A DNA stretch of 62,238 nt, counting the filler, from Platydemus manokwari (Eukaryota), in NCBI GenBank assembly GCA_037951405.1. It is 5 parts of 5 records of this genome, joined end to end, with 100 filler letters (N's around TTAATTAATTAA, not from the genome) between each part and the next. Parts side by side here need not be neighbours in the genome. Positions count along the whole stretch, not along the records: positions 38,955 to 53,075 come from JBBMOY011524745.1; 4 more parts are not named here. One strand, 5' to 3'. Below, piece by piece: positions 38,955 through 53,075 of the stretch (the stretch's first letter is position 1; every line of letters starts with the position of its first letter). The position numbers were made by a program, and so were the translations under genes. Under the pieces are notes generated by a model. The model ran no database searches. It was not told the DNA's origin and worked only from the letters and a program-made list of their open reading frames with translations.

Positions 38955-39029
38955 AAATCAACAAACCATTTTTCTTATGGCCAGTGACATCTGTTACAAA
39001 AACCGGAAAGGAATTACCGACACACCTGG
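38955..39029. mobile_element. Mariner-like terminus at a contig start
   Basis: ...aaaaaccggaaaggaattaccgacacacctgg|TA. The reverse complement TA-CCAGGTGTGTCGG resembles the CCAGGTGT start of Mos1-type TIRs. Confidence 0.45.
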
Positions 39030-40199
39030 TACTTCAGAGTCATGACAAAATAAGAGATAAATCGATAAAATTATTCGATCGATTATTATTTGAAATAAAT
39101 TTAGAACACTCGAATTATTGAAAACAGTCTTCATGGTAAAAATGATCATTTTAATTTTCCAATTCATTGAAAGCTAATCTAACTAGAAATCAACTATTCA
39201 TATTCGAGAATATTTTTCTATTTTATAATTCCTATTACGTAATATGGGATGTGATTCTTGATCCATAATTATAATTATAATTGAAATTCGTATATCTAGT
39301 GAATAAAAACTTGAAATCATAAATGTGCTTCCAGGAAATTATCCAGACATGTTGTCTTATTAAATAAAATCATGAATGAAATTCCATTTAATTTTATATT
39401 TCATTAAATTTAAGAATTGTTTAATTTCAGAGAATTATTAAATTTATTATTTAATTCAATAAAATATCTGGTACTGTATGGAAAACAACTTCAAAAATTA
39501 TGATACATCGAGAACAGATAATCATACAACCCAAAATTCTTATAAGAAATACAATGAAATCGATAATTATAACAGAGCTAAAACGAATAACAAAAGTTAA
39601 GTAGAAATTCATAACCAGTATGCAAATAAGAAAAACGTCAGTTGATATAGAAAATAAAATAACAATAGGAACAATAATTCTATGAGTAATAATAACAAGT
39701 GTGACCACTATAGCATTGATTGTCCTGGGTATAAGGTGTTTAGTAAAATTCGTAAGAAGTATCATCATCGGTGGGTCACTGAGGTTTGACAATTATATAA
39801 CATGACATTGTATATAGTTCAAGTTAATATAGGTGTATATTGTAGTGTAATTGTATGTTGTAAAAATAGTATATTTTAGCAATAAATTGTATATATATAT
39901 ATAGGAGCAACAAAATTGTAAATAAAAATAGGTTAAAAATAAGAATAATTTATGTAAATAATATTAGTTTAGGAAAAATTGTAAATATGAAATATTCTTG
40001 TAAATAAATTAGTGGATAATAAATTTGTAAATATAAATAAATATTTGAACATGAAACCTTGTAACCCTTTACACAATAAAAAATTGAAAGTATTAAATCA
40101 AAATTCCTTGGCAAAAGATAATTCACCAACCAATAAAAATAAATCAAATTAGAGAAAAATTAAAATACATTAACCCATAATTATTCCCAAAATTTATTT

Positions 40200-43100
40200 C
40201 TTGCGCCAGTTGTTTGAAAATCAAAACGATGAGTAAGTCTCATTGATATGAAGCCATGAATTTTAACCATTTTAAAATCTACAACATAAATTTGGAAATC
40301 GAATCCACCTTTGTTCAGTGATATCCCACAAGACTTTATACAACATCAAAGTCAAAGCTTATGATTAAAGAAATAATGCCCAAAGAACGCATGGTCTATC
40401 ATAAAGTCATCTTACATGCTGTCCTCACCCCCTTCAAAATGCTATGGAATAAAGAAACATCAGGAATTAGATGCATTTTCAATAATACATGTAGCATTGA
40501 GAGAAGTCGTTCAAACGAGGACCACCTTCGTACAAAATCGAATTATATCGACATCAGTAAACCATATTTTACTTTCAAACGTTTCCGATTTTTCAGTAAT
40601 TTCATTAAGTGTGCTATCTAAGCCAGTAGGATCTACTTGATCATAAAAGATCTTGACTGGTGTAGGCACAATTTGACATTTTTGAAGTTCTTCCAAGTTT
40701 TGTGTCAATGTCAATTTCATAGCTCGTCCAGGTCTATTGGATATTGGCGTATGTACATTTATTTTCGTCTGACTTTTTTGACTATACTATTAATAGTGGA
40801 AAAGGAGTCAAAGAAGCTCATACTGTTTTTATTATAGCTTAGACTTTTTCCTGTTTTTTTATTTTTACGGGAGTTGCAAGTATCTATTGAATCCTTTTCA
40901 GTTTCAATATTAATGACATTTTTAGTCAATGTTTCACTAATATATATAGTTTCATTTTCTGTATTTAAGTCATCAGTCATACATCTATTATATTTTTAAT
41001 AGCTTATAGGATTGGTTTTTTAAGCTCGTTGAGAAAAGTTATCAGACACATTCCAATCCCAATTCGAGATTGCAAACAATTTTACATGATTTTGATCACC
41101 AAATTTTAGTTTTTCTTTCATTAATGATTCATATTTATCTCGAATTACTTTCGTTACCAATTTGATAGCTTCACATTTCAAATTTCTAGCTGCGACCCTA
41201 GATCATCAGAGTTACTTTGTATGCTGATAAAAACAGAGCTGACTTTATAAATCGTATCAGTTTAGGTGGTTTCAATAAGTCAGATTTCTGTGACGTTTCT
41301 AAGCATGAATTCTGTTCTCAATTAAAGAAGCCCCAAAATTTGAAGTGAAAATTTTAAAAAAATAAATTTAAGTAAGAGTTACTCTTACGCTTTACCGCTT
41401 TTTAACAAGTTTAATGATTTACTTTCATTTATATTATATCTATTTTCCATTTTGGAAAAAAGCTCTTTAACATTCTATAATGATGATAATTTAATTGTCT
41501 TTAGTTTGAAAAGATTTGCTTTTTCAAGCCCGCAGCAGATGAATAATTTCCTGGAGATTCTGACAAAAGGGTCATGGTTTCTCAACTGAAATCATATATA
41601 AGAACTCTCAATTCTTGACCAGTTCAGACTCAGTTACTCAGAAAACAAACACATCGGTTCCGGTAACGATTTGAGTTCATGGATGTATAAACTTAAGCTG
41701 ACTAGCTCAAACTGATCAAAAGGCCAAAAGCATTTTGGAAATGAAAAATGTAACGAATAAGGTTATGGGAGTAACTTTCCATATAAGCTGTTGTTTCCTT
41801 TTCACTACTGATTATAGTGAAGATATTTGGAATATGAACATATATGAGAATGCGTGCTTTCTCCTTATGGAAGATTTTACCCCTAATAACTCTTTCGATA
41901 ATTTGATTAGATGGTCAATCTGTGTCAACCGACACTTAAACTGAAAAAATCCGAAATGGTCTTACAAATTGTAATTAGATGAAGAGGTCATCAATACCTT
42001 TAATTTAGGTGGTGAACACAAAATTGGGCGTTCCATCAGAAATTATCTATCAGCCAGTGAGGGTTAAACAGATAAATTAATCAAACTATTAGACATTAAT
42101 GAAAAATGGAAAAAATGTCAGCCCATATTGGCTGTCGTAAATTCAAAAATGGAGCACTCAGGCACTTTGTGAGTCTATTGGTTAAAGACTTTAACACCCT
42201 ACTCCATGACACAGCTTATCCATTAGCTTTAATCAACAAATTTGAGAAAGTCCTAGGTAAAATTCTGATTGATAACACGCCACTCGAATCTGATTTACCG
42301 ATTGTTCCGACCATGATAAAGAAAAAAATAGGAAATATTTCTCCAAATGGTACTCCTATCACCTCAAAACTTTGGCTTCACACTGCAAAACAGTTGTTAA
42401 ACCGAAATATTAAGACAATCACGATCCGATAGAAAAAGAAACGGAATCGGCTTTGAATTCCATAGCTAACCTTCAAGATATTTAAAGGGAGGTTACTGCA
42501 CTGGAAATTTATACTTCTCATCAGAGCATATCACAATTTCAGAGATCATATATCTCCAAAAACACTTAATGATCTAACAAAGTTCAACCCACGTGCTTGG
42601 TTCGATGATCACTAGGTACTGGATACATTATTGAGTGATTCTAAACGACACTCTATAGCGCCCATTGTGTTGTCTGAATTATGATGATTGTCACCAGCTC
42701 TATGATATTCAATCACATCATGAAAATACTTCAAAGCTTTTCGTGCCAATTAATATCGATATTTGTCTTTGGATTTTATTTATATTTGATAACATATCTT
42801 AAACTAATTATTGGCTCGACCCTATCAGAGGTGTATTCAAACTAAGTGAATCCAAACTCAAATGTCTTAAAATTCACTCTTTTCTTAACACTTGTTTCGA
42901 TACCAATCATCAAATTTGTCATGATCAACCGTACTTATTATGATACCAAGATAATGACGTTTATTGTGAACCATTGATATGTATTTATGCAATACAATTA
43001 TCAAGGGACTTAAGTCCATCTGAAAGAACTATATCAATAGGAGACATCCGAAAATTAGTTTATCACCTCAATCGTCGGAATGTGTTCAGTAGTTATACTG

Positions 43101-43880
43101 AGATTAATTCATTAATAACACTATGCGATGGTGGCTACGCTGATTGTTGAAGTTATATGCAAACAATGAATAAGTTCCAAAAATTCCTGTTTGCTGGTAA
43201 GAAAGCTATAATAGTCTTGGATTACATTCTATTGTGTAATCCACTAATAGAAAATAAGGAAATCGTTTTAATCACGTGAAAGTGTTTCAATTACGCAGCG
43301 CAGCGTATGTGTGCAACGTTGTTGAGATTGGCGATATCCTGTACGTGTTCATTTACTTCAACTCGACAAAAACCGTCTCAATGATCAACCACAACCCGAA
43401 ATCATATAGTGAGATAATTGATAAGTCTCGAGTCCTCCTTGAAAGATTTATGAAATATTTTTTCTTACAATCGGTGAGCGAATCCATATTCAATTTTAAA
43501 CAATGGTCATTCCTTAAAAACGATTAAGTTATTCTTGTAACAAGAACCATGGAATGTGTGTGTCTGGTGCTAAGTGAAATTGGGTCCAAAAATTCCATCT
43601 TTAGTACCAGCATGTATGATGGATTTTGCAATTATAATTGTTACAGTGTCAAAAACAACATAAGTCACGTTAATAGGAGAATATCACTCAAGGATATAAT
43701 ACAATTCTCCCTCTCGCTGGACTCGATAAAATGGATAATAGGGGTTGATCTTGTCACGATCATAGCTTTGATTGATAGCAATTGCAAGTACCTCTCTGAG
43801 CATTTAGATAGAGCAAAAATAAAACTGGTTGATGTTATCTTTTGCCTAAAAATTCCTCCCAGCTACGATATAGTTTAAGG
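40200..43880. pseudogene. Block of disrupted coding-like sequence (minus 40200-40980; plus 41700-43880), probably a decayed large transposon
   Basis: Locally higher GC, and chains of 70-110 aa ORFs on consistent strands broken by stops and frameshifts. No obvious splice pattern. Confidence 0.4.
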
Positions 43881-44879
43881 TTTGTGAGAGTCGATTATTC
43901 CTTAATAGGGACTTCTTTTACTTTTAAGGAATATATATAAATTGATAAATAAATTTCTGCAGTTGTGGTGACTTTGAATGTAAGTATTCCGATTGACTGT
44001 TGAGAGTATTACATTCGATAGTAGGACTTATCTCTCACCACTTCAATAACATTATTGGACTATCTTTCTTTCATTTTTATTTTTTTTTATTTTTATTTAG
44101 ATTCCGTGTATTATTTTCTGGCTTAAATTATGAAAAAGTTTTAAGATGGTTGTAACATTTCCAAAAGCTACCAACACATCCAGAGAATAACAAAATATAA
44201 TTGTTTGTAAATGAATCTTTTCAAAGACCAATAGACTGATGCTCCTTGGAATTAGCATGATTTTGTTATTCTTATTGCTATTAATAGCCAATACTACTCG
44301 TCTTCCCTAATTGCTAGATTGAATCACAATATATTAAATTTTAAAAAGCCAGTGTATAAATGAAATTCGAATCCAGATGAAGAAATACCTACAGAATTAT
44401 ATTTGAAATCATTGATATATTTTATTTATCTTCAACACATAACTCATTGATTGATTTATTATTTTGTTTATTTATAATAATTATTTATTGATGAAGAAAG
44501 CATTTTGGAAAATAATTTTTTCTATCAAATTATTCTTACAAGCCTTGTAAATGAAAACGATGGCCGCAAAAAGAGCGATCTTTAAAATGAATTTTCAATA
44601 TTCAATCCAAATATTCATACAAACCGATATCGAATCAAAATCATTATATTTTCATTTTTTATCATTCTTCAAATTATAAAATACTTTTCTAATTTATTAT
44701 AATTTATTGTCCTAACATCAATATACAGTATTTCCAGTTGCATTCTTTCAATGATTTATTCTCTTTCAAGATTCTTGGTCAGTTTTGTCATATTTCATTC
44801 GATTGAGATCTATCAATCCGTGTTCGTTGTTCTCAGTTGGTTTAAGGCCTTCATTCATGATGGTGGCTTATGTTTCCTT

Positions 44880-45460
44880 TGGCCAGTGTGCGATTTATAT
44901 GTTGAAAAGGCATCTATTAATAGCGTTGCAATCAGGAAGCCTGCAATATCTATAATCTGCGCTTTGCCTAGGTCGAGTTATTGAGAACTTTGTTGTTTTT
45001 TGGGTCTCATGAGCCAAGAGCTCTGATGCAGATTGCATCCAGTGATGTTTCATATCTGGTCTTTGTTTTGATTTCTGATGCAATTGATCTGTATTTCTTG
45101 TAGGTCAAGGTTTGGTGTTTTTTGAAGTTTGCATTGATATCAAATGGGATTTTCAGGTCGATGATGAAAGAATGTCTTTTTTTGTTCCTGATGATTATAT
45201 CCGGTCATAGTTTCGTAGCGGTTTCCAGTGTCTTTGTCTGTGTCCAGTCCGAGAGATTGTAAATAACTGCCGAGTTGATCTAAGTTAATTGAATGTCTCT
45301 TCAATGCCAGACCAGGGAGTTGTGAACAATATATAAAGATATGAGAGTCAATCTCCGGTTGTATTTGGCACTTTCGGCATAGTATAGATTTCTTTTGTTT
45401 TGTAAAATATGGGCTGTAAATGAGAATAAAGAGATTGTTTCTGGCTTGGAATGCAAAAAT
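44880..45460 (-). mobile_element. 3' fragment of an RLE-type non-LTR retrotransposon (R2/NeSL/R5/Utopia group), disrupted
   Basis: Broken minus frames give, in order: FQARNNL; LCRKCQIQPE..LSHIFIYC....LKRH (CCHC knuckle + RH); PDIIIRNKKRHSFIIDLKIPFD (PD..D nuclease); KKYRSIA; DAICIRALGS*DPKNNKVL. Confidence 0.85.
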
Positions 45461-46258
45461 TCAAACTACCGGTGATAGGTAAAAACTTTTGAGCGGTTTC
45501 TCCGAAAGATGAATGGCCGAGAAGCAGTGAACTAACCTACCTTATTTCTTCATTATCGTTAATTAGTAAATGCATCTGGTAAATGCATTAATCAGCTTCA
45601 TCAAATGAAATCTCTGTAATAAATGTAATTTAGTCTTATTCGAGTGTACCACAGCTACTGAAGCAAAACCTAACAATTTTAACGGTTCATCTGTCATCTT
45701 ATATTTTAAAATTTCTTAAAACATTTTAAAAATCCCAAATTTATCAAAATTGAAGACCGATTCAATTTAATGAATATTTTAATGAAAAATCAAAATAATA
45801 TACTTTAATAACAAAATAATATACTTTAATGATAAAATATTTATTGGTTTATCAAAAATCAGAAGGCTCTTGTTTCATTGCTTTCTTTATCGATAAATTA
45901 TTATTATAAACAAAATATATCAATGATTTCAAATATAATTCTGTTGGTTTTTCTACAGCTGGATTCGAATATCAGTTGTTCACTGACTTGAAAATGTAAA
46001 AAATATTGTGATTCAATCTAGCAATTAGGGAGAGAAATCTCAAACAATTAATCAATAATTCATACAACTCATTTAAAATTCAAATATCTCTGTTCCATTA
46101 CAAGTGTGCATATCTTAATCTTCATTCACAATATTCCAGAACATGTTCACACATTTCCAATATTTGAATCATTTTCATTCACAATTTTCTCAATCATGTC
46201 ATTTCGATCTGTAATTTCGATATTAGCTGACATCTGCTTTTGCAATGCTTCAATGGTC

Positions 46259-46317
46259 AACATCTGTCGATTATACTATCATAATAACTCTCGACAGATT
46301 TGATTTGTTATATAAAA
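46259..46317 (+). promoter_or_regulatory. Putative core promoter of the His-rich peptide gene
   Basis: TATAAAA at 46311-46317, about 40 bp before ATG 46358. AACATCTGTCGATT (contains E-box CATCTG) at 46259-46272. 9-bp inverted repeat atctgtcga/tcgacagat. Confidence 0.5.
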
Positions 46318-46357
46318 GAGAATGATTTTTATACGAAATCAATCAAACATAGTCACA

Positions 46358-46585
46358 ATGATGAAATTGATATTGTTATACATGATCATTGGTATTGTGA
46401 TGATGAATATCATGGAGACGAGATCAGAAGATACTGTCGAGGATGATCATGAAGAAGATCATGAAGAAAATGCAGGGAAAGGAAAGCATGGACATGGCAA
46501 AAAAGGTAATGAACATAAAGGACATGGCAAAGGGGGTCATGAACATGGAGGACATGGCAAAGGCGGCAAGAAAAAGGAACAATGA
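46358..46585 (+). CDS. Small secreted His/Gly/Lys-rich peptide precursor, 75 aa
   Basis: MMKLILLYMIIGIVMMNIMETRS (signal-like) + EDTVEDDHEEDHEENA (acidic) + GKGKHGHGKKGNEHKGHGKGGHEHGGHGKGGKKKEQ. TATA upstream, AATAAA at 46599-46604. The ORF-track ATG at 46322 is too close to the TATA box to be transcribed from it. Confidence 0.8.
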   Translation: MMKLILLYMIIGIVMMNIMETRSEDTVEDDHEEDHEENAGKGKHGHGKKGNEHKGHGKGGHEHGGHGKGGKKKEQ

Positions 46586-46757
46586 CACCACTGTGACAAA
46601 TAAAATGTGATAATAAAATATAAGTCAGTTTTGATTTTATGAATAAATTTTCATTTTGAATTTTATTTTATTTTGAATAAAAAGATCAATAAATATTGAA
46701 ATAAAATCGATATTAAATATTCAAAGTTAAATAGGTTGTAATACATTGTAATTCCTG

Positions 46758-47246
46758 ATCAAAATCATTTACATCAATAAACTTCAGATGTGAAATCATT
46801 GTAATGTCGATCGATAGTATCGATTATATTTGGAAGAAAACTAAAGGAGAAACTAAATAATTTAAGGCTTGATGAGAACTGAAACAAATATCGACAAATA
46901 TGAGTTGTTAAAGAATATAATATAATATACCTTCAGAAGAAATGATGAATTTTGTTGAGACTGTTGCTATGAATTGAGATAATTAAATTGGCTTAAATTA
47001 TAAATTTATAAATATAGATAAAGTCTGTTTTTCAGGGCATAACAACAATAAAAAAGATTCAGAAATGAAATCATAGCACGAAAGAGTTTATAGTTAAAAT
47101 CGATCGATAAATACAACTTGTAAAAGATTTATTGCGATATCAAAGATCATTATAATGTGGATTCATTCAAATCATTTCTTTTAATAATTCTTTTCTACAA
47201 TATTGGAGAAAGAATATGTTGCTGTTTATCTCGAATTCTAGATTCA
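46758..47246 (+). repeat. Diverged direct repeat, copy 1 (copy 2 at 51724-52087)
   Basis: Shared blocks in the same order: tcatttacatcaataaact, cgatcgatagtatcgattatattt, tttattgcgatatcaaagatc, tttcttttaataatt...tctacaatattgga. Confidence 0.85.
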
Positions 47247-48544
47247 AAATAAAAGTCCCCTTCTCATTATATTTATTATAAATAAGATGGATCGAAATTT
47301 CAACCAATCAGTTTCATTAGAGCTTTGATAATATGAAAATTTAACTAAATTTTATAGATTTAATTTTATAAAAAATTATGTTTATTTATCAGTATAATGG
47401 TATTTGAATAGATTTCTTATTGTTTTGTCATTTCAGTTCGTTTTCGACGAGCATTTTTTAAAATACTTGTGACTAAGAACAGCAATAAGAATAATAAAAA
47501 CAAGCTAAGGAACATCAGTCTATTATTTTGTTGAAAAGAATTATTTACAAATAATTACATTCTGTTGTTGTCTGGATTTGTCTGTTATTTTCGGAGATGT
47601 TAAAGTAATTTTGAATCATTTCCATAATTTAAGCCAAAAAATGATACAAGGAATTTTATAAACCATCTAAATTAAAGTACCGACAAATCAAAATGATAGA
47701 AAGATATTCCAATACTGTTATTGGTTTGATAAGTTATAAATCCTATTATCGAATTTAGTACTGGCAAAAGTCAATTGCAATACTTTTATTCACCATAACT
47801 ATTTATCAATTTACATATGTAAGCTGGTACATAGTAAAACAAGAACCGATTAAAGAAAAATCGACCTTCACAAACCATTGAGATGATCGATAAAATTTTA
47901 ATATATTAATGTCGTTAATTATATATAATAATAAGCTCTTGCATCTCTGACTAATGCATTTTAGTTCAGCTCTCACAGGGCTCTTTACTTACAAAATTTT
48001 ACTTATAAAATTTTTAAAACATTTACAAACTTTTAAAATTCTTTTAAAACATTTTATATAAAAATATTAAATTTTAAATGTTTTAAAAGTTATTTTTAAT
48101 TATTTCAATTAAACCTCACAGTTCTCATGAAATGACCTTAACCTAAATGATTCTTTCCGGGGAATGTGGCTATCTCATGTGAAATGTTTTGTTATTTCTT
48201 ATTGGATTGGAAATATTTTTAAAATTTCGCTTGGCTTTGTAATTGTTTTAAATTGTTTATAAATAATTATGAATAAATTATATAATCTTATATATTTGTT
48301 GTCCAAAAATATGAATTATTATTTTGAGGCTACTATAATTTTTTTAATATTGATAATTTTTATTTTTTTTTGCTCCACATCATATCATTCGTTTTAAATA
48401 TAATATTACCACCAAATTATTTGATGAAAATAAGAATCAACACAGAATTATTTTATAAAGATCAATATCATTGATAAGATCAAATTGCCTTTATAGTCTA
48501 TTCGTGTTTGTCCAGGATTTTATGTGGCCGTTTCGAAATTAGCT

Positions 48545-49040
48545 TAGATATCGCTATCATCCTATTTAATGTAAAATGCCCCACGGACGAACCTGCTTTA
48601 ACGACCGAAACAACTCAAAAAATATAGAAAATACACCGACCTCCGAAATGCTATCAAAAAAAGCGGCCCTATTGGATTGTGAAACTGTTCACTTTTGTTG
48701 TATGAGATCCTAGAACTTGGCATACACAGACAAACGATAAAGTTTTCAATAAATTAGAGATGAACAAGAAAATGACAAATAAAATAGCTCTTGCCAGTAT
48801 AAAGTCGAATATAAATGCGAGCTATTTGCAAATGGAAATTCAATACATGAAAGACAGCCTTAAAAATAAGGGAGGAGGATATCCAAGACAACACCGACTG
48901 GATTGCAGAGACAGCATTGAATGAAATGTTGAATTGATTGTATGATGGAACTAGCGAACTGTGATTCATGGATCGATCAAAAGAAAGAACGATGTACATC
49001 CCATATTTTAATGTGTGGATATCAATGTTTATGAATAAAT
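48545..49040 (+). mobile_element. Second RLE-type non-LTR retrotransposon 3' fragment, disrupted
   Basis: IILFNVKCPTD, then (frameshift) KYRKYTDLRNAIKKKRPYWIVKLFTFVV*DPRTWHTQTNDKVFNKL. This matches the D(V)KCP...K..KY..L...FVVG.LG.W...N pattern of R2/NeSL-like endonucleases. An AATAAA follows near 49034. Confidence 0.65.
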
Positions 49041-50091
49041 ATTAGCACTAGCTTTGAACTCGCTATCTCACCTATCAAGAAATCAAATTATAATTTAATA
49101 TATCTATCATTATTTCTCTTTCAAAAATGTGATCATTTTTAATTTTGTTTTTTACTGGAACACATGATAATTTAATTATTTTGTTTCTCGTATTTTCAAA
49201 TATCGATTCTTTATTTATGGATTAAATAAGATATTTTCAGATTCATATTTTATTTATTTATAAAAAAAACGTTTAAACTACACATCGAAATAAATTTCGA
49301 AATAGTGTTTCTGGAGATACAACGAAATATCAGTTGCACGTAATAGAAAAAGTTTCAACAAGTGGTAACCAAGCTTTACCAAGGTCTGAAATGAAGTTTT
49401 TCAAAATTTACTGAATGATTTGAAAATGTAAGTTGTTGTTCTCATATTATGACATGTGAGAATAATTAAATAAAATTAAATTTTTACATATCTAATTTTG
49501 TATAAAATTATATTTATTGGTTTTGATAATTGTATTTTGAATACATAATTTAATGATTTGCTTTTTCAAGTCGTTTTTGATGCTTTTTTTTTATATAATA
49601 GTAGTAGCTAACATGGCGACCACGTATCTGGATTCAATTCTGAGAAAATCAATAACTGTAAATTATCGAGAAAAAGGAAGAAGATATTGAGACTATATAG
49701 TGACTACAGATTTAGAAAAGACATAAAAAGATTGAGGAATTCGAGATTTTGTCGTAAGCAAATATGTAGAATATTTGATACAATTTCAATAAAGAATATA
49801 ACGAAAATATTGATTTTAAAAACGGGGGATGTGAGAAGATTAAAATTTAATGAAATGTTTTATATATAATTTGAAATTTTAATAAAAATTATATTTTGTT
49901 GCTTAGATAATTGAAATTGAATAAATAATTTAATGTGAAATTTGTTCGAGTTCGCTTTCGATGTGACTTTTATATACTAGTGGCAGCTAAGCATGAAAGA
50001 ATAATAATGAATATAAGAATAGAGGAAGAAAACGAAAATCCAATTCAGCGATAAATGTTTTTGAAAAGTGTGTTACATGATTATGGGTTCA

Positions 50092-50180
50092 AATCTTCAT
50101 TAAGATAATTATGAATTTGTGAATTCGACAGCTTTCGGATACTGATGAGTGAGCATGCCTTCAAAATTATTTATAATCAT
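50092..50180 (+). repeat. ~90-bp direct repeat, copy 1 (copy 2 at ~51485-51573)
   Basis: aagataattatgaa(t/c)ttgtgaa(t/a)tcgac..tttcggatactgatgagtgagcatgcct.caaaattattta occurs at both sites. Confidence 0.9.
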
Positions 50181-50828
50181 TATCATTAAAATCGATAATT
50201 ATAGCTAAAAAATCTTTAGATGACTTCTTAAGACAATTTTATATGAACACTACAAGTAAATAAAAATTTAAATGATCATTTTGGATTTTATTTTCATTGT
50301 TGTAATAACAATGTCGTGAAAATTGATTTTGGTCATCGAAAAGTAATATATCGACATATCAATAAATAAATTAGTTTTTGCAATGTTAAATAAAAATTTG
50401 AATAAAATAAATCCTCAACAACAAAGAAAATTACTTCTAAATTATATAATAAAGTAAAACACTCCACTTGAGTAATCACCAAATTTCTTGCTTAACTTTA
50501 TATGGAACAGTAACAATTTCTATTTGTTACCATCGATTAATGATATATCACGATAAGAGTAGATCATAGTAATTTGAAAAGTGAATTATAGATTTCAAGA
50601 AACTTTCAAAGTCCTTGAGTTTTTCTGCAAAAATAGTATCACACCATAGAAAGCTACCAATACAATAGCCTATCTTTACTTGGTTGATTGTATCTCTCTG
50701 CAAACATCTGTCGATTTTTAACATGTTAGACTATTTAAGATCCCATTGTATTTTTAAGAGATTGTTTCACAACTTTCTCCTTTTATATGAAGGAAATTTG
50801 TCTATCTCTTAAATATTAAGCAAAAATC

Positions 50829-51428
50829 ATGAAAATAACTTCCATTCTTGTTTCACTGGTTACATTGCTGGTGATATCATCGCAAAATCAAGATTTGAGA
50901 GAAAGAAAAGAGATTGGTGAAATTTTGTCAAAACTTGCTGATAAACGAGTCAAAAATATTCAAAATGAAATTGAAAAAACTACCGGAATAAATAAAACGT
51001 TAAAAACAATCCTTGTTTCAAAAAATAAAGATAATGATGTGGACGAAACAAACAACGATCACGGTGAAAAGGAATCTGACAGTGAATATTGTGACTACGA
51101 AGGAGATGGTGTTATTTTTTCAAATCATGGCCAAGAAACAAATGAAATCAATATCGAAAATAAAAATGATACCAAAGGCAATCAAAATGATGAAAAAGAA
51201 TTTAATTATCAAAATGATGAAGAAGAATCAGATAGCAATGAATGTGTTGACGAAGAGGATGCTGTTGTGAATAGTTATCGAAAACAAAAGTTAACAAATC
51301 ATAATTTTCTGGAAGACGATGAAGACAAAAATTCGATAAAACTAAACAGTAAACAGTCGAATGGTGAAGGAGATATCGTTACTAATATCGATGAAACACA
51401 CGAAACAAAAGAGAACAGTTGTTGGTGA
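50829..51428 (+). CDS. Putative secreted acidic (D/E/N-rich) protein, 199 aa
   Basis: 600-nt ORF in very AT-rich DNA with a signal-like MKITSILVSLVTLLVISS. Internal repeat NNDHGEKESDSEYCDYEGDGVIFS / NYQNDEEESDSNECVDEEDAVVNS. The C-terminus may be truncated by a local duplication. Confidence 0.6.
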   Translation: MKITSILVSLVTLLVISSQNQDLRERKEIGEILSKLADKRVKNIQNEIEKTTGINKTLKTILVSKNKDNDVDETNNDHGEKESDSEYCDYEGDGVIFSNHGQETNEINIENKNDTKGNQNDEKEFNYQNDEEESDSNECVDEEDAVVNSYRKQKLTNHNFLEDDEDKNSIKLNSKQSNGEGDIVTNIDETHETKENSCW

Positions 51429-51482
51429 TATCATCGCAAAATCAAGATTTGAGAGAAAGAAAAGATATTGGTGAAATATTGT
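50865..51482 (+). repeat. 64-bp direct repeats (50865-50928 and 51419-51482)
   Basis: ttg(c/t)tggtgatatcatcgcaaaatcaagatttgagagaaagaaaaga(g/t)attggtgaaat(t/a)ttgt, offset 554 bp. Confidence 0.95.
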
Positions 51483-53075
51483 TCAAACCTTCTTGAAGAT
51501 AATTATGAACTTGTGAAATCGACTGTTTTCGGATACTGATGAGTGAGCATGCCTACAAAATTATTTATTATCAATACAGATTTAATTTTGTATAAGATTA
51601 TATTTAATGTTGTGCCTTTTCAAGTCGTTTTCGATGTGATTTTCATATATTAGTCATAGCTAAGTATGAAAAAATATTTGCGTTTCTTTATCGATCTCAA
51701 TGAATGTTAAAATGTTATTTTTAATCAAATTCATTTACATCAATAAACTCTAGATATGCAAGCACTAAATAACGATCGATAGTATCGATTATATTTCAAT
51801 ATAAATTTATAAACATAGATAATTTTTGTTTATCAGATATTTTGAAATATATATGAACAGAAGTAAATATGAAAATCGATAATTTAGTTTTTAAGGGTCT
51901 TTATAGCGCATATTGTGAGCTGTGATCGATCTTGAAAGATGAGAATAAATACTGCTTATAAAGATTTATTGCGATATCAAAGATCTTTATAATATGAATT
52001 TATTTATGTTTTGAATTTCTTTTAATAATTATTATCTACAATATTGGATGATTATTGTTTCGTTGAATATCTGGAAGTCAAGATCCATTGTTGGCGGATT
52101 TGTCGTCACATTATAATAAATTTATGAAAGGTAATTTTCTCTAAAGAGGTATTACTGAGGTGTATTAATGAAAAATTATTAATTTAAATAATTAAATATC
52201 GATTAAAGTAATTCTATAAGAGCATATGTGTATTTGTGTGTGTCTCTATTCAATTCGGATATTAATTTGATTTCACGTGGAAATATTTCAATTGGTTTCA
52301 TTTTTTGTCTTTTAGAATTATTTTTTTCCAAATAAATGTTTTGATATACTTTTTTAATTGATATTTTATCGATTTCTTATTTTCATTAAAAGAAACTATT
52401 AGATTTTACTTTTAATCGTTCTAAAATAGATTTATATTGTCTCGTTTTGTGGAATTCTCTTTGATTTTGATTTTTAGTTCTTGACTTTGCTCAGAATGCT
52501 GCCGTTGTTCTAAATCCGACAACATTAATTTATAATGATCGATTTATATCTTTAGTTCAAACGATCAATAATTCCATTTTAGGAATAAAAAACCTGAAAG
52601 AATATTTTGTTGTATTTCAGTATAGAGAATTTGGAATTTGTGATTTTGGACTTCTCTCAAATATTCACATATGCTGTTATATATTTAAGCATAACTCACA
52701 TTTGTCACTTTTGAATATCAGGTTTGGCATGATATTCAATTATTTGAGTAATCTTGATGGTTTTGAAAATCTGTTAAACACCGACAATGTTGTGAACAAT
52801 AAAAATTGAAAAGATTTTTAAAAAAGCAATTCTAAATATGAGGGTTTTATTGAACACAATGCGATTCTAAATGTCGCATTTGAACAATCAATATATACTC
52901 AAGATTCATCCATTTCTGTTTCGTGAATGTTCCTAATGTTCCACACAAATATCTATGAGGTCCGCTCCGTTTTAAAGGTGTTAATGATTCTTTGATAGAT
53001 ATTTTTGAATGGTTATTTACCGATATAAGCTCAATTTATATTTGTGGACCTATTGCTACATTGGACTTGTATATT

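What the first reader, a model, noticed from the sequence alone, without database searches (positions are those of the whole stretch)
46358..46604. Orphan secreted His/Gly/Lys peptide with an acidic pro-piece: candidate antimicrobial or metal-binding mucus peptide
Seen: a compact intronless unit (TATA, ATG, stop, AATAAA) encoding a signal-like segment, an acidic 16-mer (12-nt repeat gatcatgaagaa x2) and a 36-aa tail with 14 Gly, 10 Lys and 7 His. The tail is built on a strict 30-nt period (ggacatggcaaa at 46490, 46520, 46550 = GHGK). Known: anionic pro-piece plus cationic tail is a common antimicrobial precursor layout, and Gly/His-rich peptides (histatins, holotricin-3, tenecin-3) are antifungal or bind Zn/Cu. 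Inference: a lineage-specific defence, adhesive or metal-binding peptide. I do not recognise it as a named family.
Basis: partly seen in the sequence, partly recalled or inferred. Interest (0 to 1): 0.72.

Follow-up and report, generated by a model that had tools for sequence, protein, structure and literature searches.

The report
Small orphan His/Gly/Lys secreted-peptide gene
A compact, intron-free 75-codon reading frame with the look of a small secreted, unstructured peptide (water-repelling leader, acidic block, then a Gly/His/Lys tail) is really there and has no relative in any database, but no RNA data exist to show that it is expressed, so it remains a plausible species-specific peptide gene of unproven function.

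Summary

For a real gene:
- A simulation control makes a leader-like ORF of this kind rare by chance.
- It is the most G+C-rich and purine-rich spot of the 14-kb piece.
- A statistically secure 199-codon ORF of the same build lies 4.2 kb downstream.

Against:
- Four of six frames are open across the tail.
- An ORF this long is expected about once per piece.
- The context is repeat-rich.
- The single public run holding this DNA is DNA-like, so expression is untested.

No homologue was found in 1.84 billion cluster representatives, the 5.8-billion-protein word search, JGI metagenomes, PDB, Pfam or full-text papers. Contig depth hints at several near-identical copies in the genome.

The "acidic pro-piece" reading lacks a processing site at the acid/base junction. 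The secreted product may instead be one two-block ampholyte (pI about 6.3) whose charge flips with His protonation. Antimicrobial, metal-binding or adhesive roles rest on composition alone. I rate it a likely new, lineage-restricted member of a known kind, of modest interest.

The parts
46262..46299 (.). Perfect 9-nt inverted repeat (ATCTGTCGA / TCGACAGAT) with a 20-nt spacer, ending 10 nt before the TATA box. Possible regulator site (inference).
   Evidence: Read directly. A 14-mer overlapping its left arm recurs at 50703-50716, upstream of the neighbouring 199-codon ORF (E 0.13, not significant).
46309..46316 (+). TATATAAA box, 49 nt before the ATG.
   Evidence: The 8-mer occurs only 4 times on the + strand of the 14-kb piece.
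46339..46345 (+). Initiator-like TCAATCA. Its A at 46341 lies 32 nt after the start of the TATA box, which would give a 17-nt leader (inferred start site).
   Evidence: Read. No transcript data.
46358..46585 (+). 75-codon ORF with its TGA stop. A at -3 of both ATGs.
46358..46426 (+). Leader-like residues 1-23: Lys3, uncharged hydrophobic residues 4-19, then a polar stretch with Thr21 and Ser23 at -3/-1.
   Evidence: Hydropathy. Chance control. AF2 helix 2-25 at pLDDT about 87. SignalP was not available.
46427..46471 (+). Acidic Asp/Glu/His block, residues 24-38, charge -10 at pH 7. It contains the exact 12-nt doublet at 46445-46468, which encodes DHEE twice.
46472..46582 (+). Gly/His/Lys tail, residues 39-75, pI 10.2, +7.4 at pH 7 and +12.5 at pH 5.5. 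Built on a 30-nt (10-codon) period at 46490-46563. KK at residues 49-50 and KKK at 71-73, each preceded by Gly.
46599..46640 (+). 3' end signals: AATAAA at 46599 and at 46612, CA at 46626-46627, then a T-rich stretch at 46629-46639. Inferred poly(A) site, giving an mRNA of about 290 nt.
   Evidence: AATAAA is common here (55 on the + strand), so this is weak on its own.
46742..46831 (+). About 90-nt block 160 nt after the stop, also found about 285 nt after the stop of the 199-codon ORF (51708-51796). It is part of a mosaic repeat, not demonstrably part of the gene.
   Evidence: (82% over 85 nt, E 2e-18), (families D9, D16).

Best explanation
window:46358-46585 (+) is most likely a real, very small, intronless, TATA-driven gene. 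It probably belongs to a family of near-identical copies confined to this genome or lineage.

Proposed mechanism (all inferred): the product enters the secretory pathway through a 23-residue leader. It is released as an unstructured peptide of about 52 residues made of two opposite blocks. The first is an Asp/Glu/His block (-10). The second is a Gly/His/Lys block (+7 at pH 7, +12.5 at pH 5.5).

With nine His residues the net charge flips around pH 6.3: about +5 at pH 5.5, as in an acidic secretory granule, and about -2 at pH 7. I think the most likely working mode is a His-dependent, pH- and Zn/Cu-responsive secreted defence or surface peptide. It would bind metals or polyanions rather than lyse membranes, because the tail has no hydrophobic residue. 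The acidic block would neutralise the basic block during storage.

Shown: the sequence anatomy, the absence of any homologue, and a predicted helix followed by coil. Inferred: transcription, secretion, cleavage, family size and every functional statement.
For: Gene-like anatomy:
- TATATAAA at -49, an initiator-like site 32 nt after it, and A at -3 of the ATG.
- AATAAA, then CA, then a T-rich stretch after the stop.

Leader:
- Leader-like start followed by a uniformly hydrophilic remainder.
- In 200 second-order Markov copies of the piece, such leader-like ATG-ORFs of 60 aa or more occurred 0.04 times per piece. None had a hydrophilic remainder.
- In the real piece, 3 of the 26 ATG-starts of 60 aa or more pass the leader test. 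Two of them are this ORF's two ATGs; the third was not printed by the script.

Composition:
- The ORF is the highest G+C (0.44) and highest purine (0.76) 150-nt window of the 14-kb piece.
- Both repeats have periods that are multiples of three and are far above chance.

Structure:
- AF2 gives helix 2-25 at pLDDT about 87, and the rest coil at 53-60.

Reads from run X1:
- Summed contig depth is 190-390 over 46004-46504, against about 10-27 in nearby low-copy stretches.
- Among the rows shown, no insertion or deletion is listed inside the ORF, while the flanks carry them (45987, 46624). 33 further substitution rows were not shown.
- The one listed difference in the ORF, 46512 A>G, is a missense change (Glu52 to Gly) that keeps the frame.
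- One contig follows the ORF to 46431 and then continues with different letters that stay open in frame.

Neighbour:
- The ORF at 50829-51428 has the same build: a weak TATA about 45 nt before the ATG, a leader-like start, then an acidic body.
- Its 199 codons are far too long for chance, with 6e-5 expected per piece.

Against: - No RNA run holds this DNA. The only holder behaves like a DNA run, so there is no evidence of transcription.
- No homologue exists anywhere, so conservation cannot be used.
- Over the tail, 4 of 6 frames are open, and a stop-free run of 87 or more codons is expected about once per piece.
- The unit sits in repeat-rich DNA: a 1.7-kb inverted-repeat element ends 327 nt upstream, and mosaic repeats lie downstream. 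It also appears multi-copy, which fits a non-coding repeat as well.
- The tool warns that summed contig depth is not a copy number.
- There is no convertase site between the acidic and basic blocks.
- The 16-residue hydrophobic stretch is long for a leader and could be a membrane anchor.
- SignalP could not be run.
- All functional readings rest on composition.
Confidence: 0.42

Rival explanations
1. It is not a gene. A moderately repeated, purine-rich minisatellite-bearing segment happens to be open in this frame and to start with AT-rich codons, which read as Ile/Leu/Met.
For: - Four of six frames are open over 46430-46585, and about 1.1 stop-free runs of 87 or more codons are expected per piece.
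- Tandem repeats of similar score are common in the piece.
- The region looks multi-copy and lies between repeat blocks.
- AATAAA and TATAAA are frequent in this 72% A+T DNA.
- There is no homologue and no RNA evidence.
Against: - A leader-like start with a hydrophilic remainder never arose in 200 simulated pieces.
- TATATAAA occurs only 4 times on the + strand, and one copy is correctly placed.
- The stop is followed within 50 nt by AATAAA, CA and a T-rich stretch.
- No indel is listed in the ORF across the contigs laid, whereas the flanks have them.
- A secure gene of the same build lies 4.2 kb away.
Confidence: 0.3
2. It is a real secreted peptide, but a material component rather than a defence molecule. 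It would be a pH-triggered self-condensing ampholyte, or a Lys/His-rich cross-linking partner, in an adhesive, mucus, capsule or eggshell secretion.
For: - The product has two blocks of opposite charge, with pI 6.3 and a charge flip between pH 5.5 and pH 7.
- It is Gly/Lys/His-rich and predicted to be disordered.
- A strongly acidic secreted-looking protein is encoded 4.2 kb downstream on the same strand and could be a polyanionic partner.
- From my own knowledge: sandcastle-worm cement, mussel byssus and marine-worm jaw proteins use Gly/His/Lys-rich proteins with pH or metal triggers.
Against: - There is no Tyr (DOPA), Cys or Ser (phosphorylation) in the secreted part, and known adhesive and tanned proteins rely on these residues.
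- At 52 residues it is far smaller than known structural proteins.
- There are no expression data.
Confidence: 0.13
3. It is a prohormone or neuropeptide precursor. Cleavage at Gly-Lys-Lys (residues 48-50) and Gly-Lys-Lys-Lys (70-73) would release two C-terminally amidated peptides, and the acidic block would be a spacer.
For: - A leader, then an acidic spacer, then Gly followed by basic clusters is the classic precursor layout (my own knowledge).
- The motifs can be read.
Against: - The released peptides would be low-complexity Gly/His/Lys strings with no hydrophobic or aromatic pharmacophore.
- Lys-Lys is a poor convertase site compared with Lys-Arg.
- A multi-copy, near-identical family is atypical of neuropeptide genes.
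Confidence: 0.05
4. It is a real micro-protein that is not cleaved. The hydrophobic stretch would act as a signal anchor, holding the charged His-rich tail at a membrane surface.
For: - The uncharged stretch is 16 residues long, bounded by Lys3 and Glu20, which is long for a leader.
- AF2 draws one continuous helix over residues 2-25.
- Weak compositional matches to ZIP and Ni/Co transporter His-rich loops.
Against: - Sixteen residues is short for a stable membrane span.
- Small residues sit at -3/-1 (Thr21, Ser23).
- The transporter matches are far below threshold.
Confidence: 0.07

Closest known systems
Gly/His-rich antifungal peptides (shepherin I/II of Capsella; holotricin-3 and tenecin-3 of beetles)
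   Same: - Secreted, unstructured peptides dominated by Gly and His and built on short internal repeats.
- Shepherin I binds Zn(II) and Cu(II), and Zn induces its antifungal activity (PMC10698721, abstract seen).
   Different: - No sequence relation was detected.
- This tail is 27% Lys and has no Tyr, Gln or Leu.
- It is joined to a strongly acidic block.
- Activity is untested.
Anionic pro-piece plus cationic peptide precursors (for example Hydra arminins, defensin and cathelicidin-type precursors; from my own knowledge)
   Same: The order is the same: leader, then an acidic block that balances the charge, then a cationic C-terminal block.
   Different: - No dibasic or RXXR processing site lies at the junction here.
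- The cationic part lacks hydrophobic residues.
- There is no homology.
SpTransformer (Sp185/333) proteins of sea urchins
   Same: - Small clustered multi-copy genes flanked by repeats.
- They encode a leader, a Gly-rich part and a His-rich part, and are intrinsically disordered immune effectors (PMC5491942 and PMC5940198, abstracts).
   Different: - SpTrf genes have two exons and much larger products with defined element patterns.
- There is no sequence similarity.
- Family size here is only hinted at by depth.
Pfam PF07172 GRP (plant glycine-rich protein family)
   Same: Leader followed by a Gly-rich low-complexity body. The alignment spans residues 4-70.
   Different: The score is 20.8 bits against a gathering cut-off of 30. 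The match is compositional and does not show membership.
His/Gly-rich material proteins (Nereis jaw Nvjp-1, Glycera jaw protein, sandcastle-worm cement Pc proteins; from my own knowledge)
   Same: Gly/His(/Lys)-rich proteins whose condensation is triggered by metal or pH.
   Different: Those are much longer and usually also rich in Tyr/DOPA. No sequence relation was found.

Membership tests
Pfam PF07172 GRP | Score at or above the curated gathering cut-off (30 bits) | tested here: not met
   20.8 bits, E 6e-4.
Gly/His-rich antifungal peptides (shepherins, holotricin-3, tenecin-3) | Mature peptide dominated by Gly and His in short repeats | tested here: met
   The 36-residue tail has 14 Gly and 7 His on a 10-codon period. 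It also has 10 Lys, which those peptides lack (my own knowledge).
Gly/His-rich antifungal peptides (shepherins, holotricin-3, tenecin-3) | Detectable sequence homology to a member | tested here: not met
   phmmer against 1.84 billion representatives gave one hit, which is spurious. PDB was blank. Low-complexity filters may hide weak matches.
Gly/His-rich antifungal peptides (shepherins, holotricin-3, tenecin-3) | Antifungal activity, enhanced by Zn/Cu | not testable with these tools
   Needs the synthetic peptide and MIC assays.
Secreted peptide (classical secretory pathway) | Cleavable N-terminal signal peptide | tested here: inconclusive
   The heuristic features are present: Lys3, a 16-residue hydrophobic core, Thr21/Ser23 at -3/-1, and a rare-by-chance control. 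No trained predictor was available, and a signal anchor is not excluded.
Anionic pro-piece / cationic peptide precursors | Acidic block that balances the charge of the cationic block | tested here: met
   -10 against +7.4 at pH 7.
Anionic pro-piece / cationic peptide precursors | Processing site (dibasic or RXXR) between pro-piece and mature peptide | tested here: not met
   The junction reads ...HEENAGKGKH..., with no dibasic or furin-type motif.
Neuropeptide or prohormone precursors | Gly followed by basic cleavage sites flanking the peptides | tested here: met
   G-KK at residues 48-50 and G-KKK at 70-73. The motif alone is weak in a Gly/Lys-rich string.
Neuropeptide or prohormone precursors | Neuronal or endocrine expression and conserved bioactive core | not testable with these tools
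   No RNA data and no orthologues.
SpTransformer (Sp185/333) | Sequence homology and two-exon structure with element patterns | tested here: not met
   There are no hits, and the ORF is a single uninterrupted exon.

The most novel reading that the evidence does not exclude
The unit is one member of a rapidly diversifying, genome-specific family. Its members share promoter and leader but carry different mature parts. This member's product is not processed. Instead it acts as a His-gated two-block ampholyte: soluble and cationic in acidic granules, and self-neutralising at external pH, where it condenses by itself, with Zn/Cu or with the neighbouring polyacidic protein. That would be a minimal peptide-scale pH switch for forming a protective or adhesive secretion.
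Probability: 0.07. Interest if true: 0.6.

Novelty: new member of a known kind. Interest (0 to 1): 0.3.

Why it matters
If expressed, this is a taxonomically restricted secreted peptide of very simple design: 52 residues and effectively five residue types. Its nine histidines place the net-charge flip near pH 6.3. That makes it a convenient natural model for His-gated metal or polyanion binding. It would also add to the scattered set of Gly/His-rich defence or material peptides.

If its genomic copies share a leader but differ in the mature part, it would also illustrate how such effector families diversify.

As it stands it is one of the many unverified orphan small ORFs in a repeat-rich invertebrate-like genome. 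No long-standing question hinges on it.

Tried and rejected
Searches for relatives of the 75-residue product, all blank:
- Word-indexed search of 5.8 billion proteins.
- phmmer against 1.84 billion representatives. The one hit, P0001, is a translated tandem repeat that matches only the hydrophobic leader, so I rejected it.
- ESM Atlas.
- JGI metagenome scan: 331 pattern matches, none confirmed.
- PDB.
- NCBIfam, noise only.
- Pfam, sub-threshold GRP, ZIP and SelP matches that reflect composition.
- Exact-product look-ups for the 75-aa and 87-aa forms.
- Full-text search for six short motifs of the peptide, and three topical paper searches that found no matching family.

Expression: no RNA run holds this DNA. 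The one run laid is short DNA-like contigs and cannot show a transcript.

Organism identity:
- Nine other ORFs gave no Pfam hit.
- The 199-aa neighbour and a 109-aa ORF found nothing.
- The Atlas was blank for a 116-aa ORF.
- A ciliate or other variant genetic code was rejected, because no long ORFs appear under alternative stop sets beyond chance.

Other checks:
- No paralogue lies inside the piece by tblastn or blastn.
- A shared promoter between the two leader-bearing ORFs was rejected. Only a 14-mer is shared (E 0.13), and the upstream alignment is at background level.
- No Rfam family and no tRNA in the piece.
- Substitution patterns among the three 30-nt units are too few to test for selection.

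Full report
**1. What is there**

The piece (38955-53075) is 72% A+T and has no N. At 46358-46585 on the + strand lies a 75-codon ORF.

- TATATAAA at 46309, and AATAAA at 46599 and again at 46612.
- An exact 12-nt doublet at 46445-46468.
- GGACATGGCAAA exactly at 46490, 46520 and 46550, with 0.03 expected and 0 of 100 shuffles reaching three.
- A TRF array of period 30, 2.5 copies, 86% matches.
- A 36-residue tail with 14 Gly, 10 Lys and 7 His.

Both ATGs have A at -3. An initiator-like TCAATCA lies 32 nt after the TATA box. The stop is followed by AATAAA, a CA at 46626 and a T-rich stretch. An in-frame ATG at 46322 lies only 6 nt after the TATA box, so it would not be transcribed if that box is used.

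**2. Is it more than chance?**

Several single features are weak:
- A stop-free run of 87 or more codons is expected about 1.1 times per piece.
- Four of six frames are open across 46430-46585, because the stretch is T-poor.
- AATAAA occurs 55 times on the + strand.

The combination is not weak:
- In 200 second-order Markov copies of the piece, ATG-ORFs of 60 aa or more with a leader-like start occurred 0.04 times per piece. The test required Lys/Arg and no acid in the first six residues, then a 12-residue uncharged window of mean hydropathy 2.2 or more.
- None of those simulated ORFs had a uniformly hydrophilic remainder.
- In the real piece, 3 of the 26 ATG-starts of 60 aa or more pass the leader test. 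Two of them are this ORF's two ATGs, and they are the only ones that also have a hydrophilic remainder. The script did not print the third.
- The ORF is the top G+C (0.44) and top purine (0.76) 150-nt window of the piece.
- The neighbouring ORF at 50829-51428 is far too long for chance: 199 codons, with 6e-5 expected per piece. It also starts with a hydrophobic stretch and has a weak TATA about 45 nt before its ATG. Compact intronless units of this build therefore do exist at this locus.

**3. The product**

- **Residues 1-23.** Lys3, a 16-residue uncharged hydrophobic core, then Thr21 and Ser23 at -3/-1. AF2 without an alignment gives helix 2-25 at pLDDT about 87, and the rest coil at 53-60.
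- **Residues 24-38.** An Asp/Glu/His block with charge -10 at pH 7.
- **Residues 39-75.** A Gly/His/Lys tail with pI 10.2, +7.4 at pH 7 and +12.5 at pH 5.5.
- **The whole 24-75 peptide.** pI 6.3. Its charge goes from +4.6 at pH 5.5 to -2.4 at pH 7.

There is no dibasic or RXXR site at the acid/base junction. The only basic clusters are G-KK (residues 48-50) and G-KKK (70-73), inside the tail. The tail has no hydrophobic or aromatic residue.

**4. Relatives**

None was found:
- The word-indexed search found no candidate.
- phmmer against 1.84 billion representatives returned a single protein. It is a translated tandem repeat that resembles only the leader.
- The Atlas, the JGI metagenome scan, PDB, NCBIfam and a full-text motif search were blank or noise.
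- Pfam gave only GRP at 20.8 bits against a 30-bit cut-off, plus ZIP and SelP His-rich loops. These matches reflect composition.

The organism could not be identified. No other ORF in the piece has a hit, and a variant genetic code is not indicated.

**5. Reads**

Only one public run (X1, 2024) holds the stretch. It holds 68% of the sampled words and is not on record as RNA. Its short contigs tile the intergenic DNA at depth about 10-27, so it behaves as a DNA run.

Over 46004-46838 the summed contig depth is 113-392, highest over the leader and acidic block. This suggests several near-identical copies, although the tool warns that summed depth is not a copy number.

Among the rows shown, the ORF carries one difference and no indel:
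- The difference is 46512 A>G, a Glu52-to-Gly change that keeps the frame.
- The flanks carry several substitutions and two indels (45987, 46624).
- 33 further substitution rows were not shown, so this is a weak argument.

One contig follows the ORF to 46431 and then continues with 30 different letters that stay open in frame. This is a lead for a paralogue with the same leader and another mature part. It is a single contig, and ten open codons are not significant.

**6. Context**

- A 1.7-kb element with 126-nt inverted ends (44304-44429 and 45906-46031, 86%) ends 327 nt before the ATG.
- An older inverted repeat of about 200 nt (44084-44290 and 47470-47671) brackets that element together with the gene.
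- Blocks downstream of the gene (46742-47463) recur, partly permuted, at 49485-50182 and 51481-52087. They include a block of about 90 nt after both leader-bearing ORFs.
- The two upstream regions share only a 14-mer (E 0.13).
- There is no Rfam family and no tRNA in the piece.

**7. Reading**

I put about 0.6 on a real gene for a small secretory-pathway peptide, and about 0.3 on a fortuitous ORF in a repeat.

Given a real gene, I think a membrane-lytic antimicrobial is unlikely, because the tail has no hydrophobic face. A His-dependent mode fits the composition best: pH- and Zn/Cu-responsive binding or sequestration, in the manner of shepherin-type Gly/His peptides (PMC10698721). A self-neutralising, condensing ampholyte is the more novel alternative.

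The 'pro-piece' idea is weakened by the missing processing site. A prohormone reading (G-KK and G-KKK) and a signal-anchored micro-protein are minor rivals.

**8. Verdict**

If real, the unit is a new lineage-restricted member of a known kind, the low-complexity Gly/His-rich secreted peptides. Interest is modest until a transcript or the genomic copies are examined.

Noticed in passing
window 50829-51428 (+): A 199-codon ORF that is far too long for chance (6e-5 expected per piece). It has a hydrophobic leader-like start and an Asp/Glu/Asn-rich body with four Cys, a weak TATA about 45 nt upstream, and no homologue or Pfam family. It is probably a second lineage-specific secreted protein gene on the same strand.
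   Followed up: partly
window 50865-50939 and 51419-51493: A 75-nt direct repeat (91%) brackets the acidic body of the 199-codon ORF. The second copy is in another frame and would end after 25 codons. The long ORF may therefore have arisen by a 554-nt insertion or duplication into a much shorter leader-bearing ORF.
   Followed up: no
window 44304-46031: A 1.7-kb element with 126-nt inverted ends (86%) and further matching inner arms (44467-44502 and 45879-45914). It has no coding hit and raised contig depth in run X1. It looks like a non-autonomous DNA transposon ending 327 nt upstream of the ORF. No clear target-site duplication was seen.
   Followed up: partly
window 44084-44290 and 47470-47671: An older inverted repeat of about 200 nt (75-82%) brackets the nested element together with the peptide ORF. 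Its arms are at low-copy depth, so it looks like a local inverted duplication rather than the ends of a mobile element.
   Followed up: no
window 46742-47463, 49485-50182, 51481-52087: A mosaic of shared blocks (77-93% identical) appears in partly permuted order in three places. It includes a block of about 90 nt that follows both leader-bearing ORFs. This is either a dispersed repeat family or remnants of duplicated gene units.
   Followed up: partly
window 48008-48174: A very high-copy A+T-rich stretch with nested short palindromes. Summed contig depth in run X1 is about 21,000, against 10-27 for low-copy DNA. It is probably a satellite or an abundant miniature element.
   Followed up: no
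window 42103-43875 (+): A run of stop-free segments of 42-116 codons in a region of higher G+C (0.34), with balanced amino-acid composition. It has no Pfam, protein-database or Atlas match. It may be a decayed gene or transposon ORF.
   Followed up: partly
window 46118-46199: Two 29-nt copies (79% identical) spaced 53 nt apart lie upstream of the TATA box of the peptide ORF. They could be duplicated regulatory modules or simple slippage.
   Followed up: no
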